Part shown: piece by piece, positions 2,685-20,144 of the stretch
How the letters are laid out: each line of letters starts with the position of its first letter
Position numbering within the stretch: the stretch's first letter is position 1
Virus record (IMG/VR): IMGVR_UViG_3300034117_001582
Span: 124,001-188,000 of that record
Reading direction: 5' to 3' (one strand)
DNA: 64,000 nucleotides
Position numbers and translations under genes: made by a program
The notes under the pieces: generated by a model
Told to the model about the DNA's origin: nothing
The model's database searches: none
Seen by the model: only the letters and a program-made list of their open reading frames with translations

Positions 2685-2722
2685 GTTTTAATATGGTTAT
2701 GATTAATACAAATAGTTTTTAT

Positions 2723-3937
2723 ATGAGCAAAATTAGAGTATTAGTATTACCATCAGATAAGACGGGTGTTGGTAAGTTTAGAAGTATTGACCCACACGTA
2801 ATGTTACAAAATAACCACTCTGAAGATTTTCACGTGGATATTGATTATGAACCAAAAATTAACGATATAAACTATTGGAAACAATACGATATCGTACATT
2901 TCCATAGGACTATTGGTCAGGACTATGATAATTCAGTTAATCTAATCCAAAGACTTAATTCTTTAGGTCTCGTAACAATAATGGATTTGGATGATTATTG
3001 GTTACCAACAAAAGAACACCCTGTTCATCAAATGGTCTTACAAATGAAATTACATGAAAAAATCATGGCAAATTTAAAAGCCGCAAGTCATGTTACCACA
3101 ACAACATCGGTGTTTGCAACAGAAATTTCTAAGTTTAATAAAAATGTATATATTTTACCAAACGCAATTAATCCAAAAGAAGGACAATTTAATGTTAAAT
3201 CGGAAACTTCAGACAAATTAAGATTTGGTTGGTTAGGTGGTTCTTCTCACTTACACGATTTAAAGTTATTAGATGGGACTATTAGTAAATTGTCACAACA
3301 TAAAGATAAGTTTAGTATGTATCTTTGTGGTTTTGATATTAGAGGTACGGTAACTGAAATTAACCAACAAACAGGAGAACAAAAACAAAGAGATATTAAA
3401 CCTGAAGAAACGGTTTGGTCTCGATATGAAGAAATATTTACAGATAATTATAAAACGGTTGAACCTAAACATAAAGAATTTTTAATGTCATTTAAAGATG
3501 AGGAATATGTTTCGGATGTTTTACCATTCTATAATAGAATTTGGACTAAACCAGTAACAAGTTACGCAGCAAATTACAAATGGTTTGATGTGTCGTTAGC
3601 ACCAATTAAAAACCACATCTTTAATCGTGTTAAATCACAATTAAAAGTTATTGAGGCTGGTTTCCACAAAAAGGCGATTATCGCATCTAATGTTGGACCA
3701 TATACTATTGATTTAAAACACGGACTCAAAAATGGTGAATTTACTGACGGAAACGCACTATTAGTAGATGAAGCAAGAAACCATAGTGATTGGGCAAAAT
3801 ACATGAAAAAATTAATCGATAACCCTAATTGGGCATATGATTTAGGACAACGTTTGTATGAGACGGTAAAAGACACATACGACCTAAATAAAGTAACAAA
3901 AGACAGAGCTGAACTATATAAATCCTTAATAAAATGA
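2723..3937 (+). CDS. GT-B (GT4-like) glycosyltransferase
   Basis: DLDDYW, GWLGGSSH..DL, FNRVKSQLKVIEAG; start MSKIRV preferred over 2693. Confidence 0.8.
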   Translation: MSKIRVLVLPSDKTGVGKFRSIDPHVMLQNNHSEDFHVDIDYEPKINDINYWKQYDIVHFHRTIGQDYDNSVNLIQRLNSLGLVTIMDLDDYWLPTKEHPVHQMVLQMKLHEKIMANLKAASHVTTTTSVFATEISKFNKNVYILPNAINPKEGQFNVKSETSDKLRFGWLGGSSHLHDLKLLDGTISKLSQHKDKFSMYLCGFDIRGTVTEINQQTGEQKQRDIKPEETVWSRYEEIFTDNYKTVEPKHKEFLMSFKDEEYVSDVLPFYNRIWTKPVTSYAANYKWFDVSLAPIKNHIFNRVKSQLKVIEAGFHKKAIIASNVGPYTIDLKHGLKNGEFTDGNALLVDEARNHSDWAKYMKKLIDNPNWAYDLGQRLYETVKDTYDLNKVTKDRAELYKSLIK

Positions 3938-4662
3938 TAAACATACCTATTAACAAAATCCTATTTTTAGACATTGAAACCGTTGGCTTGTGTCGTAATT
4001 GGGAAGGATGTAAAGAAAATCACCCAAATATTGCAGAACAATTTGTAAAATATTTTGATTGGTTTTTAAAGCGTTTCCCTGAAGATAACGTAGAAACAGA
4101 TGGATTAGAGGAAGAACTACAAAAGATGAACGACGTTTATGAAAAACGTTCCGCACTTGTTCCAGAATTTGCAAAGATTGTTTGTGTTTCAATGGCGTTT
4201 ATGACTAAAGATGGTATTAAACAACAAACCTTTTCTAACCACGACGAAAAACAACTATTAATGGATGTTAGAGATTTATTGGATCGTTGCCACAAATTAG
4301 ATTTTTATCTATGTGGACACAACCTTAAAAACTTTGATATTCCAATGTTAGCGAAACGAATGATTATTAATGGAATTATGCCATCAAAGATTCTTCCTTC
4401 ATACGATACCAAACCGTGGGAAGTAAAAGCGATAGATACAAAAGAAATTTGGCAATACGGAGCATACACATCTATTGGTTCGTTGGATTTAGTTTGTTCT
4501 ACTATGGGTATCGATACACCAAAGGATGGACCAATTCATGGGGGAAATATTCATGAAGTTTATTGGAATAACCAAAGTAGATTAGATGAAATTTCAGAAT
4601 ATTGTGAAAAGGATGTTAAAGTATTAGTTGATTTCATAACAAAATTAAAAGAATTAAAATAA
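3934..4662 (+). CDS. PolB-like 3'-5' exonuclease (DEDD)
   Basis: FLDIET, GHNLKNFDIP, YCEKDV. Confidence 0.85.
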   Translation: MINIPINKILFLDIETVGLCRNWEGCKENHPNIAEQFVKYFDWFLKRFPEDNVETDGLEEELQKMNDVYEKRSALVPEFAKIVCVSMAFMTKDGIKQQTFSNHDEKQLLMDVRDLLDRCHKLDFYLCGHNLKNFDIPMLAKRMIINGIMPSKILPSYDTKPWEVKAIDTKEIWQYGAYTSIGSLDLVCSTMGIDTPKDGPIHGGNIHEVYWNNQSRLDEISEYCEKDVKVLVDFITKLKELK

Positions 4663-5273
4663 TGTTTAATAAAATTAAAGAAATAAAAAACCAAATGAAA
4701 ACGTTAAAGGACTTACAAGGTAAGTTTAATGATGTTGATATGTCAAACCCCCAAGCAATGTTAGAATCTATGGGGATTGATGTTGATGATTTACAAAAAC
4801 AATTTGACTCGGAATCACAAAGTATTGTTGATGCGAAAGTACCTTTACGGTTTATTAATGATAGTGAAAATGAAAATCCTGAATATGCGTATCAATCGGA
4901 TTCGGGATTTGATTTAAGATCGTCCGAAGTTATTTGGATACACCCTAATGATAGAAAATTAATATCTACTGGAATGAGATTTGATATTCCCGAAGGTTAT
5001 GAAATTCAAGTAAGATCCAAAAGTGGTTTAGCTTTAAATCAAGGTCTTATGGTTTTGAATTCACCGGGAACTGTGGATAGTGGTTATCAGGGGGAAATTA
5101 AAGTTATTATGTTTAATACCACAAACCAAAAGGTTAAAGTTGAAAAAGGTCAGAAAGTTGCTCAAGCGGTTCTTTGTCCTGTGGTTAGTGGTAAATGGGT
5201 AGATTTAATTAGAGTAGATAACATTAACAATAAAGACCGTAACTCAAATGGTTTCGGTAGTACAGGATTATGA
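4662..5273 (+). CDS. dut: trimeric dUTPase with ~55-aa N-terminal extension
   Basis: GFDL, RSKSGL, GTVDSGYQGE, AQ, RNSNGFGSTG motifs. Confidence 0.95.
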   Translation: MFNKIKEIKNQMKTLKDLQGKFNDVDMSNPQAMLESMGIDVDDLQKQFDSESQSIVDAKVPLRFINDSENENPEYAYQSDSGFDLRSSEVIWIHPNDRKLISTGMRFDIPEGYEIQVRSKSGLALNQGLMVLNSPGTVDSGYQGEIKVIMFNTTNQKVKVEKGQKVAQAVLCPVVSGKWVDLIRVDNINNKDRNSNGFGSTGL

Positions 5274-6733
5274 TAACAATAGGATTTTCAACAAGGAAAA
5301 CTAATCCAGAATTTGTGGATTACGTAAAAAACACATGTCAAATAAAAGACGTAGAAGTTATTGAAAAAGTTAATAATGGTGAAAAAAGTCTTTCAGAAGT
5401 TTATAATGAAATATTAAAAGAATCAAAAAATGATATTGTAATTTTATGTCACGATGATATTGAATTTGATACTAAAGGTTGGGGAAAAAAAATATTAAAA
5501 CATTTCCAAAATTCAGACTTTGGGATATTGGGAGTTGCAGGAACTACGGAGATGCCAGAAAGTGGTATGTGGTGGGAAGACAGACGAAAAATGTTAGGAA
5601 TTGTAAATCATAAAGACCAAGGCAAAAAATGGGAATCAAAGTATTCTAAAAGTTGGGGCGATGAAATAACCCAATGTTGTTTGGTGGATGGTTTATTTAT
5701 TGCAATTAATAAAACCAAAATAAAGAAAAATTTTGATGAGTCCGTTAAAGGGTTTCACTTTTATGATGTGTATTTTAGCACCAATAATTTTTTAGAGGAT
5801 GTTAAAATTGGTGTAATTTATAATGTTAGAATCACCCATAAATCTATTGGTAAAACAAATGAGACTTGGGAAGAAAATAAATTATTATATAAAGAAACAT
5901 ATAAGTCTAACTTACCACTTAAATCTAAAATTAATTTGGATTACGATATAAAAGAATTTAAATTCTTAAAAAAATACAATATTAAAATTGTAATTAATTC
6001 CGGTGAGAATATTGAATGGGTTGATGAGGTATTAAAAAAGATAGATTCATTTAATTTACCTAACTACTCTGTGAATTTAATCTCACATGAAAAAATAAGT
6101 GATGATATTAAAAAATACGAATCAGAAATAATAAAAATTTATGATGGGTTTTTTGATGAGTTATCCAAAAATTTATCAATATTAAAGTGGGAGGATGATT
6201 TTGTGTCAGAAAAAGATGATTTAATATTCTTTATCGATAAAAATGTAAAACTAATAAATAATATTTTTTCTTCTATGTGTAGAATACATCATACCGAAAG
6301 ACCTAATTTTGGTTGTGCGTTTCCTACATCTTTATATGAGAATCTTAGTATTTTTTCAACAAAAATAGATTACATAAGAAATGCAGATAATAATATTAAC
6401 ATTATTTTAAATGATAATAATTCATATTATAACGTAATGAGTGGGTATATGGAAAAGAACACAGCAAACTTTTCAGATGTTTTTGTAACAACACTTACTA
6501 ATTTGAAAAATAATGATTGGTTTGATATACAGTATAATACCAACACATGTTTTAATGATTTTTCCTTAAAATGTTTTTTAAGTAATAAAAAAACATACAT
6601 AGACACAGATTCGTTAGCGACTCAAACTTCTTTTTTAGATTCAGAAAAAATAAACCAAGATATAAACAAACTTTTAGCTAAGATGGTTGAAAATAAAAAA
6701 AGTGAAACATTAATAGGTGAAATGCGTGGTTAA
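5270..6733 (+). CDS. GT2-like glycosyltransferase with second degenerate GT-A-like domain
   Basis: SLSEVYN, LCHDD, GVAG, VDGLF, GFHFYD. Confidence 0.75.
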   Translation: MITIGFSTRKTNPEFVDYVKNTCQIKDVEVIEKVNNGEKSLSEVYNEILKESKNDIVILCHDDIEFDTKGWGKKILKHFQNSDFGILGVAGTTEMPESGMWWEDRRKMLGIVNHKDQGKKWESKYSKSWGDEITQCCLVDGLFIAINKTKIKKNFDESVKGFHFYDVYFSTNNFLEDVKIGVIYNVRITHKSIGKTNETWEENKLLYKETYKSNLPLKSKINLDYDIKEFKFLKKYNIKIVINSGENIEWVDEVLKKIDSFNLPNYSVNLISHEKISDDIKKYESEIIKIYDGFFDELSKNLSILKWEDDFVSEKDDLIFFIDKNVKLINNIFSSMCRIHHTERPNFGCAFPTSLYENLSIFSTKIDYIRNADNNINIILNDNNSYYNVMSGYMEKNTANFSDVFVTTLTNLKNNDWFDIQYNTNTCFNDFSLKCFLSNKKTYIDTDSLATQTSFLDSEKINQDINKLLAKMVENKKSETLIGEMRG

Positions 6734-7514
6734 AATAGTTTCAGGTTATTCGGATAAGGGAGGGTCAACAACAGCATTTATAAACCTAACCAATTTTTTT
6801 AATGATAATGGTATTGATTGTACATTTTATGGTCCACACGATTGGCATTTAAATAAATGTAAATCAGATTTATTAAAAAATGTAAAATACGATTCAGATG
6901 ATATTGTTATATTTCATTTTTTAGATTTGAAAGAAAGACCTAATGTTAAAAGGGTAATATTATCCTGTCATGAAAAATGGTGGTTCCCTGTTGGAAAAAT
7001 TACAAAATATTGGGACACTGTGGTTTTTTTACATGACCAACATAGAGATTACCATAAAGAATATACTGGCAACTTTGTAATTATTCCTAACCTAAAAGAA
7101 GACTTAAACGTATCAGATAAAACTAATGTAAAAAATATTGCAGGAATTATCGGGACAATAGAAGATAGAAAACAAACTCACGTTTCAATACAAAGAGCAT
7201 TAAAAGATAAGTGTGAAAAAATTTATCTATTTGGTCACGTTGGTGATGATAATTACTTTAATAATTACGTTAAACCATTACTCTTACCTAAAGTGATACA
7301 ATATGGTCACACAACTAATAAACAAGAGATGTATGACATGATAGGTAAAGTATATCACTCATCTAAAGGTGAGGTTGCGTGTTTAGTAAAAGATGAATGT
7401 TATTTAACAAACACTGAATTTTATGGTAATGAAGAAACCAATAATGAGGTATCTAAATTAACAAATAATGAGGTATTAATATTATGGAAAAAACTTTTTA
7501 ATTATGGAAATTGA
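6717..7514 (+). CDS. GT-B glycosyltransferase
   Basis: GGST N-terminal motif, IIGTIEDRKQTH, HSSKGEVACLVKDE; true start may be GTG at 6726. Confidence 0.65.
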   Translation: MKCVVKIVSGYSDKGGSTTAFINLTNFFNDNGIDCTFYGPHDWHLNKCKSDLLKNVKYDSDDIVIFHFLDLKERPNVKRVILSCHEKWWFPVGKITKYWDTVVFLHDQHRDYHKEYTGNFVIIPNLKEDLNVSDKTNVKNIAGIIGTIEDRKQTHVSIQRALKDKCEKIYLFGHVGDDNYFNNYVKPLLLPKVIQYGHTTNKQEMYDMIGKVYHSSKGEVACLVKDECYLTNTEFYGNEETNNEVSKLTNNEVLILWKKLFNYGN

Positions 7515-8076
7515 TAATTCAAACGGGTTTTGGCACCCAGATTTTGCCAAACAACATCACGTTCACAGTCAAAAAGTAAGTGACTGGGTTGTTAAATATT
7601 TATCTGAAGATAAAGAAACTACCGTATATGACTTTGGTTGTGGTATGGGTACATATTTAAATGATTTACACAAAAATGGTTTTAAAAACCTAATAGGTGT
7701 TGAAATGATTCCTCCAAAAAATGATTATCCGTTTGAGATTAAATCTCAAAATTTAGCGGAAAATTTTGATTTTGTGGTTAAGGGTAATGTCATTAGTTTA
7801 GAAGTTGGTGAACATTTACCACCACAACATATGGAGGTATATTTAAATAATATAACTTCACATTGTTCTAAATATCTAATCATTTCATGGGCTTTAAGAG
7901 GTCAAGGAGGTTATGGGCATTTTAATGAATTAAATAATGATGAAGTAATATCCCAAATTGAAAAATTTGGGTTTGAATACTTAAAAGAAGACTCTATGGA
8001 TGTTAGAAAAGATATTGAAGATGGGTATTGGTATTTTAGGAATTCAATAATGATTTTTAAAAAAATTAAATCATGA
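7504..8076 (+). CDS. class I SAM-dependent methyltransferase
   Basis: YDFGCGMG, SLEVGEH, GQGGYGHFN. Confidence 0.85.
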   Translation: MEIDNSNGFWHPDFAKQHHVHSQKVSDWVVKYLSEDKETTVYDFGCGMGTYLNDLHKNGFKNLIGVEMIPPKNDYPFEIKSQNLAENFDFVVKGNVISLEVGEHLPPQHMEVYLNNITSHCSKYLIISWALRGQGGYGHFNELNNDEVISQIEKFGFEYLKEDSMDVRKDIEDGYWYFRNSIMIFKKIKS

Positions 8077-8795
8077 GAATACACGCACACATATTATCAT
8101 GGAACGAAGAAAAAATACTTCCATTCACCCTCGATTATTATTCTTCATTTTGTGAGGAAATTTATATTCATGATAACATGTCAACCGATTCATCTGATGA
8201 GATATATAAAAAGTACCCAAAAGTAAAAGTATTAAAATGGAATAGTGACGAACAGATAAATGAAATGAACTACATAAACCTAAAAAATAACGAATATAAA
8301 AAACACAGTAGAGATAAAGGGGTTGATTGGGTTATTGTTTGTGATTGTGATGAATTATTATACCACCCTAATTTAATAGAAATTTTAGAAGAGTATAAAG
8401 AAACCGGTATTACGGTACCAAAAGTTTGTGGACATGATATGGTTAGTGAAATATTCCCCATTTATGACGGTGAGTTGATTACTAAAAAAATAAAAATAGG
8501 GTCAGATCGTTACCAACCCATGTGTAAAAATATTATATTTAATCCTAACGTTGATGTTAATTTTGGTGTGGGAGCACATAGTTTTTCATCATCAAATGGT
8601 ATTTTTTCTGAAAATGAAGATTTAAAATTACTACACTATAAATTTTTAGGCAAAGACTATGTAAAAAAACTTTATGTCGATAGAGCTAAAAGACTATCAG
8701 CATTTAATAAACAAAACAAGTTCGGAGAACATTACTTTAATTTACCTTTTAAATATATGGACGAGGTGTTAAGTAAAAACCAAGAAGTAATATGA
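8073..8795 (+). CDS. GT2-family glycosyltransferase
   Basis: WNEE..LP, DNMSTD, DCDE, LLHYK. Confidence 0.8.
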   Translation: MRIHAHILSWNEEKILPFTLDYYSSFCEEIYIHDNMSTDSSDEIYKKYPKVKVLKWNSDEQINEMNYINLKNNEYKKHSRDKGVDWVIVCDCDELLYHPNLIEILEEYKETGITVPKVCGHDMVSEIFPIYDGELITKKIKIGSDRYQPMCKNIIFNPNVDVNFGVGAHSFSSSNGIFSENEDLKLLHYKFLGKDYVKKLYVDRAKRLSAFNKQNKFGEHYFNLPFKYMDEVLSKNQEVI

Positions 8796-9619
8796 GAAAA
8801 ATTTTAGTTTCAGATTTTACAACAAAAGAAGTTCCTCATGGTGGATCAGAATGGGTAAATCAAGTTTTAATAGAACAATTAGGATTAGAGTTTGAATATT
8901 CACAAAACTTACAATCATTTGATTCAAATACTTTTTATATCATATCTAACATATCATTAATGAATCCTTCACTGGTTCGTCAAATACCTAATCTCAATTA
9001 TATTATAATTGAAAATGATTATAAAATTTGCCCGTCAAGACATCCTTGGCGTTACCCTGATAACATTATACCATTAAGTGATAGAATCAATTACGACTTA
9101 TATAGTAATGCGAAAGCGGTATTTGTTCAAACTACAGACCACATGAATGTTTATTTAAAAAATGATGTTAAGGCTAATTTTATAAATTTAGAATGTTCAA
9201 TATGGTCAGATTCGGATATCAAATTATTAAACGAGTTATCAGAAAAAAATAAAATAAAAAATGGTAAATATGGTGTCTATTATACAAATAACTGGATTAA
9301 AAACACACAAGGTAATTTAAAATATTGTAGTGAAAATAAATTACCATTCTCTATTATTAAAGAAAGTCACGATAGGGTTGAGTTTTTAGATAACCTATCT
9401 AAATGTGAGGGGTTAGTTTTCTACCCTTTAGCAAGAGAAACCTTTTGTAGATTGGTTGTTGAGGCTAAATGTATGGGACTTAAAGTCATTACCTCTAAGA
9501 ATTACGGAGCATCGTTAGAGACTTGGTTTGATGAGTTATCAGGTAAATCTTTAATTAGTTTTTTAGAGACAAAAACAAAAGAAAATATAAATAAAATAAA
9601 AAACTTTTTACAATTATGA
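8792..9619 (+). CDS. GT-B glycosyltransferase
   Basis: GGSE N-terminal motif; ETFCRLVVEAKCMG (EX7E). Confidence 0.7.
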   Translation: MRKILVSDFTTKEVPHGGSEWVNQVLIEQLGLEFEYSQNLQSFDSNTFYIISNISLMNPSLVRQIPNLNYIIIENDYKICPSRHPWRYPDNIIPLSDRINYDLYSNAKAVFVQTTDHMNVYLKNDVKANFINLECSIWSDSDIKLLNELSEKNKIKNGKYGVYYTNNWIKNTQGNLKYCSENKLPFSIIKESHDRVEFLDNLSKCEGLVFYPLARETFCRLVVEAKCMGLKVITSKNYGASLETWFDELSGKSLISFLETKTKENINKIKNFLQL

Positions 9620-10365: not shown

Positions 10366-10367
10366 AT

Positions 10368-11627: not shown

Positions 11628-11631
11628 AATA

Positions 11632-12486: not shown

Positions 12487-12893
12487 TAAAAATATATTCA
12501 AAAGTAGACACAACAAAATTATTACATATTATAGTAAAAAAAGAAGATATGACACCAGGTAGACAAGATATTGTACCTGAAGAAAATTTTATACAGTGTT
12601 CTATATTAAATTTAGAAAAAGACAAAACATTTAGACCACATAAACACGTTTGGAAAAGAAGAGATATAGACGTAATTGCCCAAGAAAGTTGGGTTATTAT
12701 TCAAGGGAGTGTTAAATGTATTTTTTATGATTTAGACGATACAATTTTAGTCGAACATATATTAAACGTTGGTGATTCAAGTTTTACTTTAGAGGGCGGA
12801 CATAACTACTTGATTTTAGAAGAAAATACATTAATTTATGAATATAAAACAGGTCCTTATGAGGGCCAAATAAATGATAAAACTTTTATTTAA
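12483..12893 (+). CDS. cupin-fold sugar-modifying protein (WbuC-like)
   Basis: PHKH...QE...GGH...EYKTGPY. Confidence 0.65.
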   Translation: MIKIYSKVDTTKLLHIIVKKEDMTPGRQDIVPEENFIQCSILNLEKDKTFRPHKHVWKRRDIDVIAQESWVIIQGSVKCIFYDLDDTILVEHILNVGDSSFTLEGGHNYLILEENTLIYEYKTGPYEGQINDKTFI

Positions 12894-12894
12894 A

Positions 12895-13539
12895 ATGGAT
12901 AAAATTTTGATATATATAGGACTAAACAATGGTGTTGGGTTTTTAAATATAATAAAAAATGAAAATTTTGACAAATGTTATGGGTTTGAACCAATTCCTC
13001 ACTTATATGAAAAAGTAAAAAATGAACATATAAATAACCCAAAAGTTGAAATAATTAATGCCGCTGTAGTTGAGACAGAGGGCGAGTATGATTTTTATGT
13101 TAGTAAATTTAATGATATAATTGGGGACTCTTCTTCATTATTTCAAATAACAGAAGAATATAGAGAAATAACAGGTAATGACATACACACAGACAAAAAG
13201 ATAAAAGTTAAGGGTATAAATCTTAAAAAATTTTTGGAAGAAAAAAAAATAACTAATATTAAAAAATATGTTTCTGATGCCGAAGGAATGGATTATACAA
13301 TATTAAAAAGTATTAATAGTTTTCTTAATGAAAGAAGAATTGAATTTATACAAGTTGAGTCTATTTGTGATCACGTAATAAACGAAATTAGAGAAAATCA
13401 ACCGACTAACTACGAAAAAGATTTTGTTAATTTATTATCTAATAATTATGAATTATATAAAAAACAAGAAGGCAATTACAACCAAAAATCACCTAACCAT
13501 TGGGTGAACAGGGATTTATATTTTAAACTTAACCAATAA
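12895..13539 (+). CDS. FkbM-family methyltransferase
   Basis: YIGLNNG, GFEP, NAAV, SDAEGMD. Confidence 0.75.
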   Translation: MDKILIYIGLNNGVGFLNIIKNENFDKCYGFEPIPHLYEKVKNEHINNPKVEIINAAVVETEGEYDFYVSKFNDIIGDSSSLFQITEEYREITGNDIHTDKKIKVKGINLKKFLEEKKITNIKKYVSDAEGMDYTILKSINSFLNERRIEFIQVESICDHVINEIRENQPTNYEKDFVNLLSNNYELYKKQEGNYNQKSPNHWVNRDLYFKLNQ

Positions 13540-13543
13540 AAAA

Positions 13544-14158
13544 ATGAACGTTAATTTTGAAGTAGTTCAAGAATTTGAAAATAAAATATCAAAATTTTTT
13601 GGATCACCTTATGCCGTTGCGGTAGATAGTTGTACACATGGTATTGAGTTATGTTTAAGGTACACCAAAGAAACAAAAATAAATGTCCCAAAAAGAACAT
13701 ATTTGTCCGTTCCTTTTTTATCTGATAAAATGGGGTTAGAACGAGAATGGAAAGACGAGGAATGGGAAGATTATTATACTTTAAATTATGGTAATAAAAG
13801 AATAATTGACGCAGCAGTTCTTTGGAGAAAAGATAGTTATTTACCAAATACATTTATGTGTGTTAGTTTTCAGTATCAAAAACATCTTTCATTGGGTCGT
13901 GGCGGTATTATTTTATTAGATAATGAAGAAGACTATATTAAGTTAAAAAAAATGTCTTACGATGGTAGATTACCTAACATACCATGGAGAGATCAAGACA
14001 TTGAAACGGTAGGTTATCATTATTACATGACGCCAGAAACAGCACAACTAGGATTAAATAAATTACAAGAAGCTATCAACACACAACCAAAAAAATGGGT
14101 AGTTACAGATTGGCCCGACTTAACAAAAATGAAAATATTTAAAAACTATGATTTATAA
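13544..14158 (+). CDS. short DegT/DnrJ/EryC1/StrS PLP-dependent aminotransferase-like protein
   Basis: AVAVDSCTHG, IDAA, SFQYQKHL..GRGG. Confidence 0.8.
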   Translation: MNVNFEVVQEFENKISKFFGSPYAVAVDSCTHGIELCLRYTKETKINVPKRTYLSVPFLSDKMGLEREWKDEEWEDYYTLNYGNKRIIDAAVLWRKDSYLPNTFMCVSFQYQKHLSLGRGGIILLDNEEDYIKLKKMSYDGRLPNIPWRDQDIETVGYHYYMTPETAQLGLNKLQEAINTQPKKWVVTDWPDLTKMKIFKNYDL

Positions 14159-14408
14159 AATTTTTGATTCAGTATCATATGGACATATGGAACCATTAGT
14201 TCCCTTTACAAAAATTGCGGAATTTAATACACTTAATGAAGTAAGTGATTTTTTATCTAAATCTGATGAATCAATTAAATACTTTATTTGTGATAAAGAG
14301 AATAAAGTTTTATTTGAAAGTACTATGAAAATATTTGAGTCACCAGATAACGGTAAAACCATCTACGAAAGAGGGTATTTACAAAGAAATAAAAAACAAA
14401 TTAAATGA
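14148..14408 (+). CDS. hypothetical protein
   Basis: 86-aa coupled ORF with IFESPDNGKTIY motif. Confidence 0.6.
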   Translation: MIYKIFDSVSYGHMEPLVPFTKIAEFNTLNEVSDFLSKSDESIKYFICDKENKVLFESTMKIFESPDNGKTIYERGYLQRNKKQIK

Positions 14409-15385
14409 AACAGAAAAAAGCATTTATAACAGGAATTAATGGTCAAGATGGTAGTTATCTTGCGGAATATTTATTGTCTTTAGGATATGAAGTACATGGG
14501 ATGGTTAGAAGACATTCTATGGCCGAAAACCAAGACTCAAGACTTTTACACTTAACAAATGAAGTGACTACACATTATGGTGATTTATTAGATGTAGGAT
14601 CAATAGACAACATATTACAAAAAGTAATGCCTGATGAAATTTATAATATTGGGGCACAAAGTCACGTTAGGATTAGTTTTGAAATACCTCAATTTACCGT
14701 ACAATCAAATGCTCTCGGTGTACTAAACATATTAGAATCATATAGAAGAATATGTCCTAATGCTAAATTCTATCAGGCAAGTTCATCTGAGATGTTTGGT
14801 AATTGTGTAGATGATGATGGATTCCAAAGAGAAACCACACCAATGCACCCTGTTAGCCCTTATGGGTGTTCTAAATTATTTGGATACTCTATAGTTAGAA
14901 ATTATCGCAATGCGTACGGATTACATGCAACTAATGGTATTTTATTTAATCATGAATCGCCAAGAAGAGGTTCTAATTTTGTTACAAATAAAGTTGTTAA
15001 AACAGCAGTTAGAATTAAATTAGGGTTAGAAACTAAACTAGAGTTGGGTAATTTGGATTCTTATAGGGATTGGGGCCACTCTAAAGACTACGTTAGGGCA
15101 ATGCACGCGATTATTAATCACGAAAAACCGGAAGATTTTGTGGTATCAACAATGGAAACACATTCAGTTAGAGATATGACAAAATACGTATTTGACCAAT
15201 TAGGTATGGACTATAAAGATTATGTTACCCAAAATAATCTTTTTATTAGACCTGAGGAGCTTAAATACCTAAAAGGTGACTCTACCAAGGCTAGAGAAAT
15301 ATTTAAATGGTCTCCGGAATATACCTTTGAATCAATGCTAGATGAAATGATTAATTATTGGTTAGATTTTTATAAAAAATTATAA
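14405..15385 (+). CDS. gmd: GDP-mannose 4,6-dehydratase
   Basis: GINGQDGSYLAE, AQSHV, YQASSSE, SPYGCSK, FNHESPRRG, RDWGH. Confidence 0.95.
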   Translation: MKQKKAFITGINGQDGSYLAEYLLSLGYEVHGMVRRHSMAENQDSRLLHLTNEVTTHYGDLLDVGSIDNILQKVMPDEIYNIGAQSHVRISFEIPQFTVQSNALGVLNILESYRRICPNAKFYQASSSEMFGNCVDDDGFQRETTPMHPVSPYGCSKLFGYSIVRNYRNAYGLHATNGILFNHESPRRGSNFVTNKVVKTAVRIKLGLETKLELGNLDSYRDWGHSKDYVRAMHAIINHEKPEDFVVSTMETHSVRDMTKYVFDQLGMDYKDYVTQNNLFIRPEELKYLKGDSTKAREIFKWSPEYTFESMLDEMINYWLDFYKKL

Positions 15386-15386
15386 A

Positions 15387-15827
15387 ATGGATAAAAAAAT
15401 TGTTGGTATAACTTGTAGTACTTTTGACTTACTACACACAGGTCACATCATTATGTTAGAAGAATGTAAAAAACATTGTGATTATTTAATATGCGCATTA
15501 CAAAATGATCCAACAATAGATAGGCCTGAAAAAAATAAACCCGTACAATCTATCGTCGAAAGATATCTTCAATTAGATGCGGTTAAATATGTAGATAAGA
15601 TAATACCTTATAGCACGGAAGAAGAATTACAATCAATATTTGCATCCTTAGATTTGGATGTAAGAATTATTGGGGAAGAATATAAAGACACACAATTCAC
15701 GGCAAAAGACATTTGTCAAAAAAGGGGTATTAAATTGGTGTATAATAAAAGAGATCATGATTTCTCAACATCCAGTTTACGGCAAAGGATTTATAATCAA
15801 GAATCCACTAAACGATTTGTAAAATAA
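15387..15827 (+). CDS. glycerol-3-phosphate cytidylyltransferase-like (HIGH family)
   Basis: FDLLHTGH, R.HDFSTSSLR. Confidence 0.85.
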   Translation: MDKKIVGITCSTFDLLHTGHIIMLEECKKHCDYLICALQNDPTIDRPEKNKPVQSIVERYLQLDAVKYVDKIIPYSTEEELQSIFASLDLDVRIIGEEYKDTQFTAKDICQKRGIKLVYNKRDHDFSTSSLRQRIYNQESTKRFVK

Positions 15828-15830
15828 AAT

Positions 15831-16571
15831 ATGACGACAAGAAAAAAACCACAAACACAAACTGAAGATAATGAACAAAAACAAGTTTCTAAAAAAGATT
15901 TTATAAACTCAACAATTAAAAGAAAACAAAAAAGTAAATTTTTATCTGATAATCAAAAAGAATATTACGATTTACTGATTAATAATCAAATAACTATTTG
16001 TTCCGGACCTGCAGGTGTTGGTAAAAGTTATATTTCCATGAAGGCTGCCGTTGATTTATTAATGGACCCAAATAACTCATATGAAAAAATAATTATCGTT
16101 AGACCGGCAGTCGAAGCCGAAGAAAAATTAGGGTCATTACCTGGTAATTTAGAAGAAAAATTGGACCCGTATATTTTTCCTTCATATTATTTATTAAATA
16201 AGATTATAGGTAAGGAAGCAAGAGAAAAATTAAAAGAGGGTGAGGTTATTGAAGTATTTGCATTGGCCTACATGAGGGGTATGAATATAGACAACTCAAT
16301 TCTTATTTTTGAAGAGGCTCAAAATTCAACACCCAATCAAATGAAACTACTATTGACAAGAATAGGATTTAATAGTAAATTCTTTATATCAGGTGACTTG
16401 GAACAAACTGACAGGTATAAAGATAAAAAACAATCAGGACTTTATGACGCATTACAAAGGTTCAATAAAATACCAGATATTGGTATTTACGATTTTAAAA
16501 ATGCTAAAAACGTTAGAAATCCATTAATTAGTAAAATATTAGTCAAATACGATGAAGAAAATAGGGATTGA
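15831..16571 (+). CDS. phoH: PhoH-family ATPase
   Basis: GPAGVGKS, RPAVE, LGSLPG, AYMRG, EEAQN, LTRIG, GD..Q.D. Confidence 0.95.
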   Translation: MTTRKKPQTQTEDNEQKQVSKKDFINSTIKRKQKSKFLSDNQKEYYDLLINNQITICSGPAGVGKSYISMKAAVDLLMDPNNSYEKIIIVRPAVEAEEKLGSLPGNLEEKLDPYIFPSYYLLNKIIGKEAREKLKEGEVIEVFALAYMRGMNIDNSILIFEEAQNSTPNQMKLLLTRIGFNSKFFISGDLEQTDRYKDKKQSGLYDALQRFNKIPDIGIYDFKNAKNVRNPLISKILVKYDEENRD

Positions 16572-17208
16572 AATTAACGGGGTTTTAAGAGATACTATAA
16601 GTAAGTTTATTCAGTTATATGAAAAAAATATGATTGAAGAAAATGAAACGGAAAACAATTTAAAATCTTTTGATGTTGATATGTCCGGCAATACTGATTT
16701 AGTAATTGAGGAAGAAAATTTTAAATACGAAATAAAAAATGAAGTAACCAGTTTAAATTTAATGAATCATTTTAGTTTTAGAAATGAGGACGAACTATAC
16801 TCTTTTACTTATGAAGACTTTGCAATGCAAATCTTTGGTCATGCTGGATCCTCAGAAACTTTTACGTTTAATGATTTAAATGAAATATATTTAAAATATA
16901 GAGATAATAATGAATTATTAATTGTTTCGGATGAGATGGGTAGATCAAAACCGGCATCATTATTTTTCCTATCTAAGTTTGGGTGTCAGTTAGAAAAGGT
17001 AAAATTTTACTCAAATACGACAATTAATTCTATGTGGGACGAGGTAGACGTTTTACTTACGTCCAATCCTAACTTAATATTAGAAAAACCAAAAGATAAA
17101 ATTGTTGTGAAATACATAACAAACTATAATAAAAATATCAAATCTGATTATGAAATTGAAAAATTAAAAGATTTTGATGAAGTATTACAAAAATTAAAAA
17201 TATGTTAA
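16552..17208 (+). CDS. HAD/5'(3')-deoxyribonucleotidase-like protein, degenerate motif I
   Basis: IGIEINGVLRD in place of IxIDxDGVLxD; YN near C-terminus. Confidence 0.55.
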   Translation: MKKIGIEINGVLRDTISKFIQLYEKNMIEENETENNLKSFDVDMSGNTDLVIEEENFKYEIKNEVTSLNLMNHFSFRNEDELYSFTYEDFAMQIFGHAGSSETFTFNDLNEIYLKYRDNNELLIVSDEMGRSKPASLFFLSKFGCQLEKVKFYSNTTINSMWDEVDVLLTSNPNLILEKPKDKIVVKYITNYNKNIKSDYEIEKLKDFDEVLQKLKIC

Positions 17209-17492
17209 ATTTTTTAGGTGAAAATTACTATATAGATGTGAATGAATTAGAAGACCAAGTCAGTCTAATTAATTCTAAGTATTATACACCCCCACCTTCA
17301 GGAGAAACTGAAAATGAACAACAAATAAGTGTTACTAGATATGAAACTTTTAAAAGTTTAATTGAAGTCATACTTACCGAAAGAGAAGAATTAGATGAAA
17401 ATTTAGGTATACATGCTGCAAAAAATTTAACTATTCCCTTTAAGATTGCATTTAATACACTATTAATGAATAAAATAATAAAAACACTTTAA
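17202..17492 (+). CDS. hypothetical protein
   Basis: 96-aa coupled ORF. Confidence 0.65.
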   Translation: MLNFLGENYYIDVNELEDQVSLINSKYYTPPPSGETENEQQISVTRYETFKSLIEVILTEREELDENLGIHAAKNLTIPFKIAFNTLLMNKIIKTL

Positions 17493-17493
17493 A

Positions 17494-18561
17494 ATGGATT
17501 TAGAAAGAATACAAAAAATTGAAAAGTCTTTAGAAAAACTTAAAGATAAAACATCAAGAATTTATTTCTTGGTTCAAGACACTAAAGGAAACCCAATGGC
17601 GGGTATTAAGTATATTTACGATATGGCATTAACCCTAAAAAATAATGGGTACAATTGTATTATTATTCACGAAACAAAAGATTATCATGGTGTTTCTGAA
17701 TGGTTGGGTCAGGAATATATGGATATACCTCATCAAGAAATTGAAAGTCAGAACTTGGCATTATCCCCCGAAGATTTTGTGGTTATACCTGAAATTTACG
17801 GTCACGTAATGGAACAAATTAAAAATTTTCCGTGTGGTAAAATTGTATTATGTCAAGCGTATGATAATATGTTGGAAACTATGTCTCCTGGAGTTAATTG
17901 GTCTCAACATGGATTTTATAAATGTATTACTACCTCTGAAAGTCAGAAAAAAATGTTATCAGATATTATGAAAGGCACCTCTTTTGATATTCTTGAACCT
18001 TTTATTTATGAGAAATTCACTAAAAAAGAAAAACCTTCTAAACCAATTATCGCAATACACACAAGAGAACCAAGAAATACCGCAAAAATTATTAAAACAT
18101 TTTATTTAAAATATCCACAATATAGATGGATTACTTTTAGAGATATGAGAGGGATTAAACTTGATGATTTTGCTAAGTATTTAAAAGATTCTTATTTATC
18201 GGTTTGGGTTGATGATGAGTCATCATTTGGTACTTACCCATTAGAATGTATGGCAACAGGGACTCCAGTTGTTGGTAAAGTACCTAACATGAAACCTGAA
18301 TGGTTAACAGAAGAAAATGGTATTTGGACATATCAATTTAATGATATTGTAGAGATTATTGCAAACTATACCCAAAATTGGTTGGAAGATAATATTTCAG
18401 GTACTCTTTATGATAACATGGAATTAACCGCTAACATGTACAACCAAAAAAATAAATTTGAGACTGATGTTGTATCTATTTTTGATGAATATTTCTCAGT
18501 AAGGTCAAATTCATTTTCTGAACAATTAGAAAAAATAAACGTAACAGAAGAAAATAAGTAA
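17494..18561 (+). CDS. GT-B (GT4-like) glycosyltransferase
   Basis: VVIPE; SSFGTYPLECMATGTPVVG. Confidence 0.8.
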   Translation: MDLERIQKIEKSLEKLKDKTSRIYFLVQDTKGNPMAGIKYIYDMALTLKNNGYNCIIIHETKDYHGVSEWLGQEYMDIPHQEIESQNLALSPEDFVVIPEIYGHVMEQIKNFPCGKIVLCQAYDNMLETMSPGVNWSQHGFYKCITTSESQKKMLSDIMKGTSFDILEPFIYEKFTKKEKPSKPIIAIHTREPRNTAKIIKTFYLKYPQYRWITFRDMRGIKLDDFAKYLKDSYLSVWVDDESSFGTYPLECMATGTPVVGKVPNMKPEWLTEENGIWTYQFNDIVEIIANYTQNWLEDNISGTLYDNMELTANMYNQKNKFETDVVSIFDEYFSVRSNSFSEQLEKINVTEENK

Positions 18562-18563
18562 TT

Positions 18564-19373
18564 ATGGAAAAAGAAAAATTAGACGTATCGGTAATTTTAC
18601 CGATTAACTCATCAAAACAAAGAGATTTTGATATACTATTTGAAAGGGCCGTTAAATCATTACAAATACAATTAACAGACATTAATGAGTTGGTTATTGT
18701 TCATACAGATGAGGACGGTTTAAAGTCAAGATTAGAGGAATACGATTATAGTGGTATCACTGTTAATTTTATTGAAAATAAAGGTGATTTTGATTTTAGC
18801 TCACAAGTTAATTTAGGTGTTAAAAACGCAAAAAGTAAGTGGGTATCCATTTTAGAATTTGATGATGAATATTCAAGCATATGGTTTAAAAATGTTAATA
18901 GATTTATTAAGGCATATCCTGAAGTGGACGCATTTTTACCATTAGTAGTCGATACAGATGAAAAAGGTATGTTTGTTGGGTTCACAAATGAAGCAACATT
19001 TGCGGCAAGTTTAAATTCAGAAATCGGGTATCTAACAAATGATGTTTTAATGGCTTACCAAAATTTCCAATCAAGTGGTATGGTAATAAAAAAAGAAACA
19101 TATTTAGAAAACGGTGGGTTTAAATCTTCTATGAGATTAACATTTGTTTATGAATTCCTTTTACGATTAACTTACAACTCTGTAAATATTATGACCATTC
19201 CTAGAATTGGTTATAAACATATGAACTTAAGAGAAGGGTCAATTTTTTGGAATTATAAAAATGGTAACGAAAAGATTTCAGACAAAGAAGTTTCATTTTG
19301 GATTGAGTCGGCAAAAAAAGAACATTTCTTCACTTCAGATAGAAATATAAAGTTTGAACCTGAACAAGCTTAA
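18564..19373 (+). CDS. GT2 glycosyltransferase
   Basis: VSVILP, NLGV, ILEFDDE, GGF. Confidence 0.8.
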   Translation: MEKEKLDVSVILPINSSKQRDFDILFERAVKSLQIQLTDINELVIVHTDEDGLKSRLEEYDYSGITVNFIENKGDFDFSSQVNLGVKNAKSKWVSILEFDDEYSSIWFKNVNRFIKAYPEVDAFLPLVVDTDEKGMFVGFTNEATFAASLNSEIGYLTNDVLMAYQNFQSSGMVIKKETYLENGGFKSSMRLTFVYEFLLRLTYNSVNIMTIPRIGYKHMNLREGSIFWNYKNGNEKISDKEVSFWIESAKKEHFFTSDRNIKFEPEQA

Positions 19374-20128: not shown

Positions 20129-20144
20129 ACAAATATTTATTGTT

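What the first reader, a model, noticed from the sequence alone, without database searches (positions are those of the whole stretch)
2723..19373. Capsule-like glycan island in a phage
Seen: about 8 glycosyltransferases (GT2, GT4-like, GT7C, GT10), two methyltransferases, cupin, DegT, Gmd and a cytidylyltransferase, tightly coupled, with no flippase, polymerase or export genes. Gmd plus GT10 points to GDP-fucose-type sugars, and Gmd plus DegT to perosamine/colitose-type sugars. Inference: cytoplasmic glycosylation of virion proteins or DNA rather than an exported polysaccharide; it may supply donors for the 50-55 kb enzymes.
Basis: partly seen in the sequence, partly recalled or inferred. Interest (0 to 1): 0.6.

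Follow-up and report, generated by a model that had tools for sequence, protein, structure and literature searches.

The report
Swappable sugar-coat gene cassette in jumbo phage
A 292-kb lake-water phage carries a block of soluble sugar-building enzymes whose middle part is swapped for a different enzyme set in almost every relative, much like a bacterial O-antigen locus without its export machinery. It most likely decorates the phage's own proteins with a strain-specific glycan.

Summary
Window 2693-19373 holds five clear glycosyltransferase (GT) genes, two weaker ones, an FkbM methyltransferase, a WbuC-like cupin, Gmd, a 204-aa mini-DegT and a small nucleotidyltransferase. An exonuclease, a dUTPase and PhoH sit among them.

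The new finding is the architecture. Four GT genes and the housekeeping genes are conserved flanks. The core (about 5950-15830) is hypervariable: 62 related loci give 220 protein families and 45 cassette types. None of the 778 ORFs has more than one membrane-like segment.

The 99%-complete genome has no priming transferase, Wzx flippase, sugar-1-P nucleotidyltransferase, second SDR (so no Fcl), hydroxymethylase or TET. That fits cytoplasmic glycan assembly from host NDP-sugars, and DNA is an unlikely target.

Protein glycosylation is supported indirectly. At 50918-55411 a 1497-aa enzyme carries a TibC-type protein O-heptosyltransferase domain (E 1e-70, catalytic Asp and four iron-finger Cys kept). 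Beside it lies a 2919-aa collagen-like protein with about 700 G-T-S/N triplets. The pairing recurs in 17 of 20 full-flank phage loci and in 0 of 37 bacterial ones.

The acceptor of the island's glycan is not identified. The idea that the island supplies donors to the 50-55 kb enzymes is not supported.

The parts
2655..2682 (+). Terminator-like hairpin (12-bp stem plus T run) just upstream of the first island gene
   Evidence: sequence seen
2693..3937 (+). Conserved flank GT 1: GT-B/GT4-like, 414 aa
   Evidence: Pfam Glyco_trans_1_4 E 3.5e-4. Three orthologues match at the same position. 62-82% identical in 8 relatives.
3934..4662 (+). 3'-5' exonuclease (PolB-exo/RNase H-like). Conserved flank, not a glycan gene.
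   Evidence: conserved
4662..5273 (+). dUTPase/dCTP-deaminase-fold protein. Conserved flank, not a glycan gene.
   Evidence: PF00692, 1.4e-24
5270..6733 (+). Conserved flank GT 2: Glyco_tranf_2_5. The first ~225 aa are conserved and the C-terminal ~260 aa are variable. The left edge of the variable core (~5950) lies inside this gene.
   Evidence: tblastn alignments stop at ~225 aa in all relatives. Contig pile-up drops at 5955.
6717..7514 (+). Cassette ORF, 265 aa, unknown (homologue only in G009)
7504..8076 (+). Cassette ORF, probable SAM methyltransferase (weak)
   Evidence: Methyltransf_23, E 2.5e-5, below cut-off
8073..8795 (+). Cassette GT2 (Glyco_tranf_2_4)
8792..9619 (+). Cassette ORF, 275 aa, unknown
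9616..10365 (+). Cassette GT-A with a Glyco_transf_7C match
10368..11627 (+). Cassette ORF, 419 aa. Belongs to a WbfN-like family shared by phages, bacteria and giant viruses; no assigned activity.
   Evidence: feature score 0.98; structure TM 0.66-0.87; 36% homologue in G003
11632..12486 (+). GT10 (fucosyltransferase family) with FucT_N domain
   Evidence: distant homologues in cyanophages
12483..12893 (+). WbuC-like cupin, candidate 4-keto-sugar isomerase/epimerase
   Evidence: 41.2 bits, cut-off 42. Co-occurs with mini-DegT in 5 of 6 loci.
12874..13539 (+). FkbM-family methyltransferase
13544..14158 (+). Mini-DegT: 204-aa sugar aminotransferase core. Asp89 and PLP-Lys113 are invariant.
   Evidence: AF2 pLDDT 89.9. 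Foldseek top hits are sugar aminotransferases, including GDP-perosamine synthase.
14148..14408 (+). Cassette ORF, 86 aa, unknown
14405..15385 (+). GDP-mannose 4,6-dehydratase (Gmd), the only SDR in the genome
15387..15827 (+). 146-aa nucleotidyltransferase. RfaE-domain-II-like (68.9 bits) or TagD-like (66.1 bits), both below the equivalog cut-offs.
   Evidence: present in 11 of 62 loci
15831..16571 (+). PhoH-like ATPase. Right anchor of the variable core; not a glycan gene.
   Evidence: 73-91% identical in relatives
16552..17492 (+). Two conserved ORFs of unknown function (218 and 96 aa)
17494..18561 (+). Conserved flank GT 3: retaining GT-B related to AmGGT/Agt alpha-glucosyltransferases
   Evidence: PDB 8xsg, E 2.5e-9; PMC12159676; conserved
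18564..19373 (+). Conserved flank GT 4: GT2
19373..20128 (+). Highly conserved 251-aa all-helical protein, possibly a phage sigma factor. It is followed by the first late-promoter-like motif at 20133.
   Evidence: A3. AF2 pLDDT 70.5. Foldseek top hits are almost all sigma factors, but E >= 0.024. Motif.
49083..49928 (-). PA14/GLEYA lectin-domain protein (second glyco-locus)
   Evidence: present in 8 of 20 full-flank TibC-like loci
49958..50884 (-). GT9 (heptosyltransferase-family) protein
   Evidence: present in 8 of 20 loci
50918..55411 (+). 1497-aa multidomain enzyme: GT4 domain (~516-663), TibC-type BAHT domain (722-1061) and a TylF/MycE-like sugar O-methyltransferase (~1305-1453)
   Evidence: The GT4+BAHT pair is conserved in 20 of 20 full-flank loci.
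57308..64000 (-). Collagen-like protein of 2919 aa. The gene runs on to 66067, beyond the window. About 700 G-T-S/G-T-N triplets; a late-promoter-like motif lies at 66090.

Best explanation
The island is the phage counterpart of an O-antigen or giant-virus glycan locus. Four lineage-conserved soluble GTs (2693, 5270, 17494, 18564) bracket a hypervariable cassette of sugar-tailoring enzymes and further GTs.

Proposed mechanism, mostly inferred:
1. The phage takes host NDP-sugars; it has no sugar-1-P nucleotidyltransferase of its own.
2. In this variant Gmd turns GDP-mannose into GDP-4-keto-6-deoxymannose.
3. The cupin and the mini-DegT convert that into a GDP-amino-6-deoxyhexose of the perosamine type.
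4. Methyltransferases decorate the sugars.
5. The GT10, GT2 and GT7C enzymes, together with the conserved GTs, assemble a strain-specific oligosaccharide in the cytoplasm directly on phage proteins, most likely surface parts of the virion.

No lipid carrier or export is involved. The cassette is exchanged by recombination between the conserved flanks, which produces glycan 'serotypes' among co-occurring phages.

Shown: gene content, solubility, lack of export genes, hypervariability and the flank boundaries.
Inferred: the sugar chemistry and the protein target.
For: - Domain assignments.
- Flank and core architecture in 8 relatives.
- In 62 loci, the 10 kb upstream of PhoH holds 220 families and 45 cassette types, and 10 of the 14 ORFs of this window are unique.
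- The pan-cassette is all glycan chemistry. Among 120 family representatives there are 13 GT2, 11 FkbM, 7 SDR, 4 DegT, 3 TylF, 3 GT11 and 3 hexapeptide acyltransferase families.
- 0 of 778 cassette ORFs have more than one TM-like segment.
- The genome lacks PGT, WecA-type, Wzx and NTP_transferase families.
- In lake metagenomes, contigs at least 85% alike pile up on the flank and drop about tenfold at 5955.
- GC falls to 26.5-28% in the core, against 31.8% for the genome.
- Protein glycosylation capacity in the same genome: a TibC-like domain with Asp110, Thr226, Lys230, Trp305 and four iron-finger Cys conserved (PMC4358343). It is paired with a collagen-like Ser/Thr-rich late protein in 17 of 20 full-flank phage loci, against 0 of 18 control loci and 0 of 37 bacterial BAHT loci.
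- Conserved GT 17494 is related to AmGGT, whose closest homologues are the Agt glycosyltransferases of Actinobacillus.
- Precedents: soluble, early-expressed GTs and GT-GT-methyltransferase fusions glycosylate chlorovirus capsids (PMC9614988); Megavirinae have clade-specific clusters of 6-33 genes (PMC10117803); mycobacteriophage virions are glycosylated (cited in PMC12619734).
Against: - No acceptor protein for the island's glycan was identified.
- A complete relative (G001) keeps the four flank GTs and its own cassette but lacks the TibC-like enzyme and the collagen-like protein. The one concrete enzyme-substrate candidate is therefore not the island's conserved target.
- The island is interleaved with nucleotide-metabolism genes (exonuclease, dUTPase, PhoH) and is not preceded by the late-promoter-like motif that precedes the structural genes. 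Its timing is therefore open.
- Soluble GTs can equally act on host lipid-linked intermediates.
- No chemistry was measured.
Confidence: 0.5

Rival explanations
1. Host-surface remodelling. The soluble GTs and sugar enzymes act on the host's own undecaprenyl-linked O-antigen, capsule or general O-glycosylation intermediates. The host machinery exports the altered glycan, which blocks superinfection by competing phages or changes the dying cell's surface.
For: - The enzyme repertoire is that of bacterial surface-polysaccharide loci.
- Hypervariability would also follow from a phage-against-phage arms race at the receptor.
- The genes sit in a non-late context next to early-type genes.
- From my own knowledge, similar 'LPS gene' islands in cyanomyophages have long been read this way. 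GT10 homologues in S-SKS1 and S-SM2 were seen.
Against: - None of 62 cassettes carries a priming transferase, flippase, polymerase, ligase or transporter. Every variant would have to fit the host's carrier and export specificity.
- The four GTs are core genes of a lytic-type jumbo phage lineage (four core GT orthogroups in the probably related moraphages).
- The same genome has a dedicated protein O-glycosyltransferase.
Confidence: 0.25
2. DNA hypermodification. The GTs glycosylate modified bases in phage DNA to evade restriction, as in T-even phages and TET-linked systems.
For: - The flank GTs are interleaved with dUTPase, exonuclease and PhoH.
- Phage GTs that build di- or tri-saccharides on hmC are known (Pyle et al. 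2024, as cited in PMC12619734).
Against: - The single thymidylate-synthase homologue matches bona fide ThyA (220 bits to E. coli TS), and no separate hydroxymethylase exists.
- No TET/JBP was found, though that search had no positive control.
- From my own knowledge, about ten GTs plus O-methyltransferases, GT10/GT11 fucosyltransferase-type enzymes and amino-sugar pathways are without precedent for DNA. I also judge 45 cassette types hard to reconcile with packaging.
Confidence: 0.05
3. The island and the 49-66 kb locus form one pathway. The island makes the donors (ADP-heptose via the RfaE-like enzyme, GDP-sugars via Gmd) that the TibC-like/GT9 enzymes put on the collagen-like fibre.
For: - The best NCBIfam match of 15387-15827 is heptose-1-P adenylyltransferase, RfaE domain II.
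- GT9 and BAHT enzymes use ADP-heptose (PMC4358343).
- Both loci lie in one genome, either side of the structural module.
Against: - The nucleotidyltransferase scores far below the equivalog cut-off (68.9 against 181.5) and scores almost equally as TagD.
- It occurs in 11 of 62 loci and in only 2 of 9 contigs known to carry the TibC-like gene.
- G008-G010 carry the TibC-like gene without it.
- G001 has the island architecture without the second locus.
- TibC sugar-binding Arg286 is Val, and the stereoselectivity residue Pro300 is Gly, so the donor may not be ADP-heptose.
Confidence: 0.15

Closest known systems
Clade-specific glycosylation gene clusters of giant viruses (Megavirinae fibril clusters of 6-33 genes; chlorovirus PBCV-1 capsid glycosylation with A064R)
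   Same: - Virus-encoded soluble GTs plus NDP-sugar tailoring enzymes (Gmd, DegT-type aminotransferases, methyltransferases).
- Rare bacterial-type amino and methylated sugars.
- Cluster content differs between related viruses.
- Multidomain GT-GT-methyltransferase proteins.
- A collagen-like viral protein as a glycosylation target in a giant virus (enzyme L230).
(PMC10117803; PMC9614988.)
   Different: - This is a bacteriophage of about 292 kb.
- Variation occurs at strain level (45 types among 62 loci whose PhoH is 79-91% identical), within fixed flanks like an O-antigen locus, rather than at clade level.
- No glycan has been demonstrated chemically.
Mycobacteriophage virion glycosylation (Che8/Corndog type; Freeman et al. 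2023, seen only as cited in PMC12619734)
   Same: Phage-encoded GTs modify virion proteins inside the host, with no export machinery.
   Different: From my own knowledge, those operons are small. Here the phage has 7 or more GTs, sugar-nucleotide pathways, a hypervariable core and a separate BAHT-collagen module. The primary paper could not be read.
Bacterial O-antigen/capsule loci (Wzx/Wzy- or ABC-dependent)
   Same: - Gene repertoire (Gmd, DegT, cupin, FkbM, GT2/GT4/GT10/GT11, acyltransferases).
- Low-GC hypervariable core between conserved flanks.
- Many 'serotypes' in one habitat.
   Different: No initiating phosphoglycosyltransferase, flippase, polymerase, chain-length regulator, ligase or transporter in the cassette or anywhere in the genome.
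Bacterial autotransporter heptosyltransferases (TibC/AAH, BAHT family)
   Same: Residues 722-1061 of the 1497-aa protein match TibC residues 40-387 at E 1e-70. The catalytic Asp110, Thr226, Lys230, Trp305 and all four iron-finger cysteines are conserved.
   Different: - Fused to a GT4 domain and, in close relatives, to a sugar O-methyltransferase.
- Arg286 is Val and Pro300 is Gly.
- The neighbouring gene is a collagen-like G-T-S/N protein, not an autotransporter (0 of 37 bacterial BAHT loci have one).
'Moraphages' (freshwater 200-307 kb jumbo phages, PMC12619734)
   Same: Habitat, genome size, the Rhodothermus phage as a distant relative in capsid-protein comparisons, and four core GT orthogroups.
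   Different: That paper does not mention sugar-nucleotide genes: a full-text search found no occurrence of 'GDP-mannose' or 'polysaccharide'. It therefore does not appear to describe a variable cassette or the BAHT-collagen module. No HSP70 was found here. Membership could not be tested by sequence.

Membership tests
Exported surface-polysaccharide locus (O-antigen/capsule) | Initiating phosphoglycosyltransferase (Bac_transf or WecA type) | tested here: not met
   No PF02397 or PF00953 match in the 99%-complete genome; the controls were positive.
Exported surface-polysaccharide locus (O-antigen/capsule) | Flippase, polymerase or ABC permease (multi-pass membrane proteins) | tested here: not met
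   No PF01943 match. No ORF in the genome has more than 4 TM-like segments and none in the island has any. 0 of 778 ORFs in 62 cassettes have more than one. Wzy_C and ABC2 families were not searched by profile.
Exported surface-polysaccharide locus (O-antigen/capsule) | NDP-sugar tailoring genes plus GTs in a variable core between conserved flanks | tested here: met
Virus-encoded autonomous protein glycosylation (giant-virus/mycobacteriophage type) | Soluble virus-encoded GTs and sugar-nucleotide enzymes clustered in the genome | tested here: met
Virus-encoded autonomous protein glycosylation (giant-virus/mycobacteriophage type) | Glycans shown on virion proteins | not testable with these tools
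   Needs virions. There is only indirect support: the BAHT domain plus the collagen-like late protein.
BAHT (TibC/AAH) protein O-heptosyltransferases, for 50918-55411 residues 722-1061 | Catalytic base Asp110 and the four iron-finger cysteines (339, 342, 358, 370) | tested here: met
   Alignment to PDB 4rap; residue roles from PMC4358343.
BAHT (TibC/AAH) protein O-heptosyltransferases, for 50918-55411 residues 722-1061 | All four sugar-binding residues (Thr226, Lys230, Arg286, Trp305) | tested here: not met
   Thr226, Lys230 and Trp305 are kept. Arg286 aligns to Val, and Pro300 to Gly. The donor may therefore differ from ADP-heptose.
BAHT (TibC/AAH) protein O-heptosyltransferases, for 50918-55411 residues 722-1061 | Autotransporter substrate encoded next to it | tested here: not met
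   The neighbour is a collagen-like protein. Bacterial loci have none.
T-even/TET-type DNA glycosylation | dCMP/dUMP hydroxymethylase or TET/JBP dioxygenase that creates the acceptor base | tested here: not met
   The one TS homologue matches ThyA best. No PF12851 match, but that search had no positive control.
GDP-L-fucose pathway | Gmd plus GDP-fucose synthase (GMER/Fcl, an SDR) | tested here: not met
   Gmd is present, but it is the only PF01370 match in the genome. The phage would need the host's Fcl.
GDP-perosamine-type pathway | Gmd plus a PLP-dependent DegT-fold aminotransferase with the Schiff-base lysine | tested here: met
   Gmd. Mini-DegT has invariant Asp89 and Lys113. The fold matches sugar aminotransferases, including GDP-perosamine synthase: TMq 0.66, prob 1.0. 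Activity and regiochemistry were not tested. The enzyme lacks the C-terminal domain.
Moraphage lineage (PMC12619734) | Freshwater jumbo phage of 200-307 kb with four core GT orthogroups and heat-shock genes | tested here: inconclusive
   Size, habitat and the four conserved GTs fit. No HSP70 was found. No moraphage sequences were available to compare.

The most novel reading that the evidence does not exclude
Lake jumbo phages carry glycan 'serotypes'. A recombining, O-antigen-like hypervariable cassette (at least 45 types), together with a TibC-type enzyme that glycosylates a 2919-aa collagen-like fibre, coats the virion in strain-specific methylated amino-deoxy-sugars. That would be a bacteriophage equivalent of the glycosylated fibril layer of mimiviruses. 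It would also be built with miniaturised enzymes, such as a 204-aa DegT, that are unknown from cells.
Probability: 0.35. Interest if true: 0.8.

Novelty: new variant of a known kind. Interest (0 to 1): 0.62.

Why it matters
If the glycan ends up on the virion, this abundant lake-phage lineage diversifies its surface in the way bacteria diversify O-antigens. More than 600 IMG/VR contigs share the capsid gene at 75% identity or more, and this cassette variant occurs in at least 20 lake metagenome runs from 2020-2025.

That would bear on host recognition, on evasion of host or grazer recognition, and on competition between co-occurring phages. It would also bring to bacteriophages the clade-specific glycosylation clusters described so far for giant viruses.

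The data also give testable biochemistry:
- a conserved pairing of a BAHT-type protein glycosyltransferase with collagen-like G-T-S/N proteins, which would be a new substrate class for that family;
- a very abundant 200-aa mini sugar aminotransferase;
- a pool of about 220 compact, soluble glycan-tailoring enzyme families.

Tried and rejected
- Megablast of the island against 50,697 phage records: no match.
- PDB sequence searches of unknown ORFs 6717, 8792 and 10368, and profile searches of the conserved 218-aa and 251-aa proteins: nothing usable.
- PHROGs on ten unknown ORFs: nothing informative.
- Atlas search of the 662-aa protein: uninformative. From its sequence it looks like a tape-measure-type tail protein, not a glycan target.
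- Sigma-70 promoter scan: no more sites than in shuffles.
- Timing from promoters: the ATATTTAT motif marks 46 genes, including structural ones, but none at the island's start, so timing stays open.
- Link between the RfaE-like gene and the TibC-like gene: no co-occurrence.
- Frameshifted DegT: rejected. The 204-aa form is a conserved family with at least 8000 database members.
- Colitose: unlikely, because the SDR it would need is absent.
- HSP70 as a moraphage marker: absent.
- The mycobacteriophage glycosylation paper is not held.
- RNA evidence: no RNA run holds the stretch.
- Complex prediction was not used. A transient enzyme-substrate pair with a low-complexity collagen repeat was unlikely to give a verdict.

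Full report
**What the window is.** The window is bases 124001-188000 of a single 291,867-bp IMG/VR virus record, 31.8% GC, with CheckV completeness 99%. It encodes:
- a T4-type major head protein (27022-28830, minus strand);
- an S77 prohead protease (30799-31509);
- a portal protein (33328-35139);
- a large terminase (35180-36958).

The nearest named capsid relatives are an uncultured 484-kb phage, Microcystis phage Mel-JY01, Flavobacterium phage immuto and Rhodothermus phage RM378, at 34-44% identity. More than 600 IMG/VR contigs carry a capsid gene at least 75% identical. The exact cassette studied here is held by at least 20 lake-water metagenome runs from 2020-2025. The phage therefore belongs to a common freshwater jumbo-phage lineage. 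It is probably the lineage, or close to the lineage, described as 'moraphages': freshwater, 200-307 kb, Bacteroidota hosts predicted, four core glycosyltransferase orthogroups (PMC12619734). I could not test membership by sequence, and no HSP70 gene is present.

**Check of the observation.** From 2693 to 20128 every ORF is on the + strand, mostly with 4-base overlaps.

Firm family matches:
- Glyco_tranf_2_5 (5270-6733)
- GT2_4 (8073-8795)
- a GT-A with Glyco_transf_7C (9616-10365)
- GT10 with FucT_N (11632-12486)
- GT2 (18564-19373)
- FkbM methyltransferase (12874-13539)
- DegT (13544-14158)
- Gmd (14405-15385)
- a cytidylyl/adenylyl-transferase-like protein (15387-15827)

Probable assignments:
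- a GT-B/GT4-like protein (2693-3937), sub-threshold but reproduced in three orthologues;
- a GT-B related to the retaining glucosyltransferase AmGGT, PDB 8xsg (17494-18561);
- a weak methyltransferase (7504-8076);
- a WbuC-type cupin 0.8 bits under its cut-off (12483-12893);
- a 419-aa ORF of a WbfN-like family shared with bacterial polysaccharide loci and giant viruses.

It left out an exonuclease, a dUTPase and PhoH, which are interleaved with the glycan genes. It also missed that the 'DegT' is only 204 aa.

**Absence of export functions.**
- No island protein has a hydrophobic segment.
- No ORF in the genome has more than four. The one with four matches no polysaccharide family.
- Profile searches of the whole genome found no Bac_transf, no WecA-type transferase and no Wzx-type flippase. 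Each family rang in 10-13 of 14 control genomes.
- There is no sugar-1-phosphate nucleotidyltransferase.
- Gmd is the only SDR.

The phage must therefore start from host NDP-sugars, and it cannot make GDP-fucose or colitose on its own.

**The main new result: a hypervariable cassette between conserved flanks.** In eight relatives the following genes are conserved at 42-89% identity (capsid 75-77% or PhoH 73-89% identical to this phage): 2693-5273, the first ~225 codons of 5270-6733, and everything from PhoH (15831) to 20513. The stretch between is replaced by other genes of similar total length.

I then took 61 further loci whose PhoH is 79-91% identical, plus this window. The 10 kb upstream of PhoH contains 778 ORFs in 220 families, of which 93 are singletons. 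These fall into 45 cassette types at Jaccard 0.7 or above. Ten of the 14 ORFs of this window are unique in the set. Gmd is the commonest family, in 35 of 62 loci.

The pan-cassette is glycan chemistry throughout. Among 120 family representatives there are 13 GT2 families, 11 FkbM, 7 SDR, 7 Methyltransf_24, 4 DegT, 3 TylF, 3 GT11 and 3 hexapeptide acyltransferases, plus GT4, GT7C and GNAT. None of the 778 ORFs has more than one membrane-like segment.

Two further observations agree. GC drops to 26.5-28% in the core. In four lake metagenomes, contigs at least 85% alike pile up over the left flank, and the summed depth falls about tenfold exactly at 5955. Co-occurring relatives therefore share the flank but not this core (these are contig depths, to be read qualitatively).

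A strong terminator-like hairpin sits at 2655-2682, just before the island. No comparable + strand terminator follows within it.

**Sugar chemistry (inferred).** Gmd should give GDP-4-keto-6-deoxymannose.

The 204-aa DegT is not a fragment:
- It belongs to a family with at least 8000 database members of about 200 aa.
- Asp89 and the PLP lysine (Lys113) are invariant.
- It lacks about 40 residues of the large domain and the whole C-terminal domain of a 387-aa DegT.
- It folds confidently (pLDDT 89.9).
- It matches sugar aminotransferases, including GDP-perosamine synthase (TMq about 0.66).

The module GT10 - cupin - (X) - mini-DegT - Gmd recurs in G003 and G008. The most economical product is a GDP-amino-6-deoxyhexose of the perosamine type. 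The cupin may shift the keto group or the configuration first. The product would then be methylated and transferred by the GT10. This is inference only.

**Who receives the glycan?**

*DNA is unlikely.* The only thymidylate-synthase homologue is an ordinary ThyA. No TET/JBP was found (no positive control). From my own knowledge, the enzyme repertoire is also unlike any known DNA-modifying set.

*A protein target is supported by a second glyco-locus in the same window.* The ORF at 50918-55411 (1497 aa) combines a GT4 domain, a domain matching residues 40-387 of the autotransporter heptosyltransferase TibC at E 1e-70, and a TylF/MycE-like sugar O-methyltransferase. In the alignment, the residues that PMC4358343 defines as essential fare as follows. 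The catalytic Asp110, Thr226, Lys230, Trp305 and all four iron-finger cysteines are conserved. Arg286 is Val and Pro300 is Gly, so the donor may differ.

Next to it lie a GT9 gene, a PA14/GLEYA lectin gene and a 2919-aa collagen-like gene (57308-66067, running past the window). That gene has about 700 G-T-S/G-T-N triplets. It is preceded by the ATATTTAT motif, which sits 4-37 nt upstream of 46 genes, including the prohead protease and other structural-module genes.

The pairing is conserved:
- The TibC-like domain occurs in 79 IMG/VR loci.
- A GT4 domain matching this protein's accompanies it in all 20 loci with full flanks, usually about 1.2 kb upstream.
- 17 of those 20 loci (40 of 79 overall) carry a G-T-S/G-S-S/G-T-N collagen-like ORF within 10 kb. 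This holds even at 44-50% enzyme identity and in either orientation.
- Controls: 0 of 18 capsid loci; none in the complete relative G001, which also lacks the enzyme; 0 of 37 bacterial BAHT loci.

I read this as an enzyme-substrate module: cytoplasmic O-glycosylation of a fibre protein. I did not find it described in the literature search.

*Limits of that support.* The second locus is itself accessory. G001 lacks window 44.2-71.6 kb entirely yet keeps the four flank GTs and a cassette. The collagen-like fibre therefore cannot be the conserved acceptor of the island's glycan, and that acceptor remains unidentified. Candidates include several large late proteins with Thr/Ser/Pro-rich repeats.

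Its family assignment is ambiguous, and its distribution (11 of 62 loci; 2 of 9 TibC-carrying contigs) shows no link.

The island is not preceded by the late motif. It ends with a highly conserved 251-aa helical protein whose weak structural matches are nearly all sigma factors. The first late motif follows at 20133. This suggests pre-late expression. That is compatible with virion glycosylation, since PBCV-1 GT genes are early (PMC9614988), but it does not discriminate between the explanations.

**Comparison with known systems.** The island works like the clade-specific glycosylation clusters of giant viruses (PMC10117803, PMC9614988) and like mycobacteriophage virion glycosylation. It looks like a bacterial O-antigen locus stripped of initiation and export.

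It fails the defining tests for an exported-polysaccharide locus and for T-even/TET DNA glycosylation. The TibC-like domain meets the catalytic and iron-finger tests for the BAHT family, but not the full sugar-pocket test or the substrate-context test.

**Verdict.**
- That this is a recombining, export-less glycan cassette is well established (about 0.95).
- That its product decorates phage proteins is the best explanation, but unproven (about 0.5).
- Host-surface remodelling remains a serious rival (about 0.25).

Novelty: a new variant of a known kind. Interest: 0.62.

Noticed in passing
window 45430-45849 (+): A full-length tmRNA gene (Rfam RF00023, 95 bits against a gathering score of 47, model positions 1-374). 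ARAGORN did not report it. It overlaps the start of the mechanically listed ORF 44216-45469 (-).
   Followed up: no
window 57308-64000 (-), continuing to 66067 in G000: A 2919-aa collagen-like protein with six G-X-Y runs totalling 2103 aa. X is Thr in 642 triplets; Y is Asn in 390 and Ser in 286. This creates hundreds of N-G-T sequons as well as Ser/Thr sites. It also explains the GC rise to 41-45% at 58-64 kb.
   Followed up: partly
genome-wide; in the window at 20133(+), 30463(-), 31531(-), 33324(-), 39631(-), 40989(-), 48001(-), 66090(-): The motif ATATTTAT lies 4-37 nt upstream of 46 start codons. 67 of its 111 genomic occurrences fall in the ~8% of the genome that is intergenic. It precedes the prohead protease, other genes of the capsid module and the collagen-like gene, so it is probably the late promoter, often with very short leaders.
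   Followed up: partly
window 20516-22504 (+): A 662-aa protein with an N-terminal coiled coil, a hydrophobic stretch and Gly-rich segments, only 29-33% identical in most relatives (one close relative, L014, 80%) while its neighbours are 55-75%. It looks like a tape-measure-type tail protein. The moraphage paper reports not finding one.
   Followed up: no
window 13544-14158 (+) and database: The 204-aa mini-DegT family is very abundant: at least 8000 proteins at E<=1e-5, and the best 120 are all ~200 aa and at least 82% identical, on contigs up to 293 kb. It co-occurs with Gmd in only 7 of 19 loci, so it probably also serves other 4-keto sugars.
   Followed up: partly
L117 and L250 (same IMG/VR contig, 3300042523_000478): This relative's TibC-like domain is 96% identical to the window's, but its PhoH is only 84% identical. 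The fibre-glycosylation module therefore appears to move between lineages independently of the backbone.
   Followed up: no
window 45964-46812 (-) and 46820-47974 (-): Two proteins with Thr/Pro-rich repeats (TGTTPTP-type and TQVTTTGQT-type) lie downstream of a late-promoter-like motif at 48001, between the capsid module and the second glyco-locus. They are possible O-glycosylation substrates. G001 has no homologue of either.
   Followed up: no
G000 290446-291576 (-) (L002:1273-2424): A 383-aa thymidylate synthase. It is about 100 aa longer than the E. coli enzyme and its match is split into three stretches, which suggests an insertion.
   Followed up: partly
window 41090-43135 (+), 43185-44219 (+), 48597-49103 (+): An ATP-dependent protease (phrog_4871, E 3.5e-223), a peptidase (phrog_4191) and a pyrimidine-dimer DNA glycosylase (PF03013) sit between the capsid module and the second glyco-locus.
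   Followed up: no
G000 242046-242531 (-) (L004:1285-2007): A further GT2 gene (E 8e-14) lies far from both glyco-loci, next to a calcineurin-like phosphoesterase.
   Followed up: no
window 70-846 (+) and 1579-2013 (+): A DUF3721-containing protein and a WYL-domain protein lie upstream of the island's terminator. They are conserved at 28-59% in relatives.
   Followed up: no
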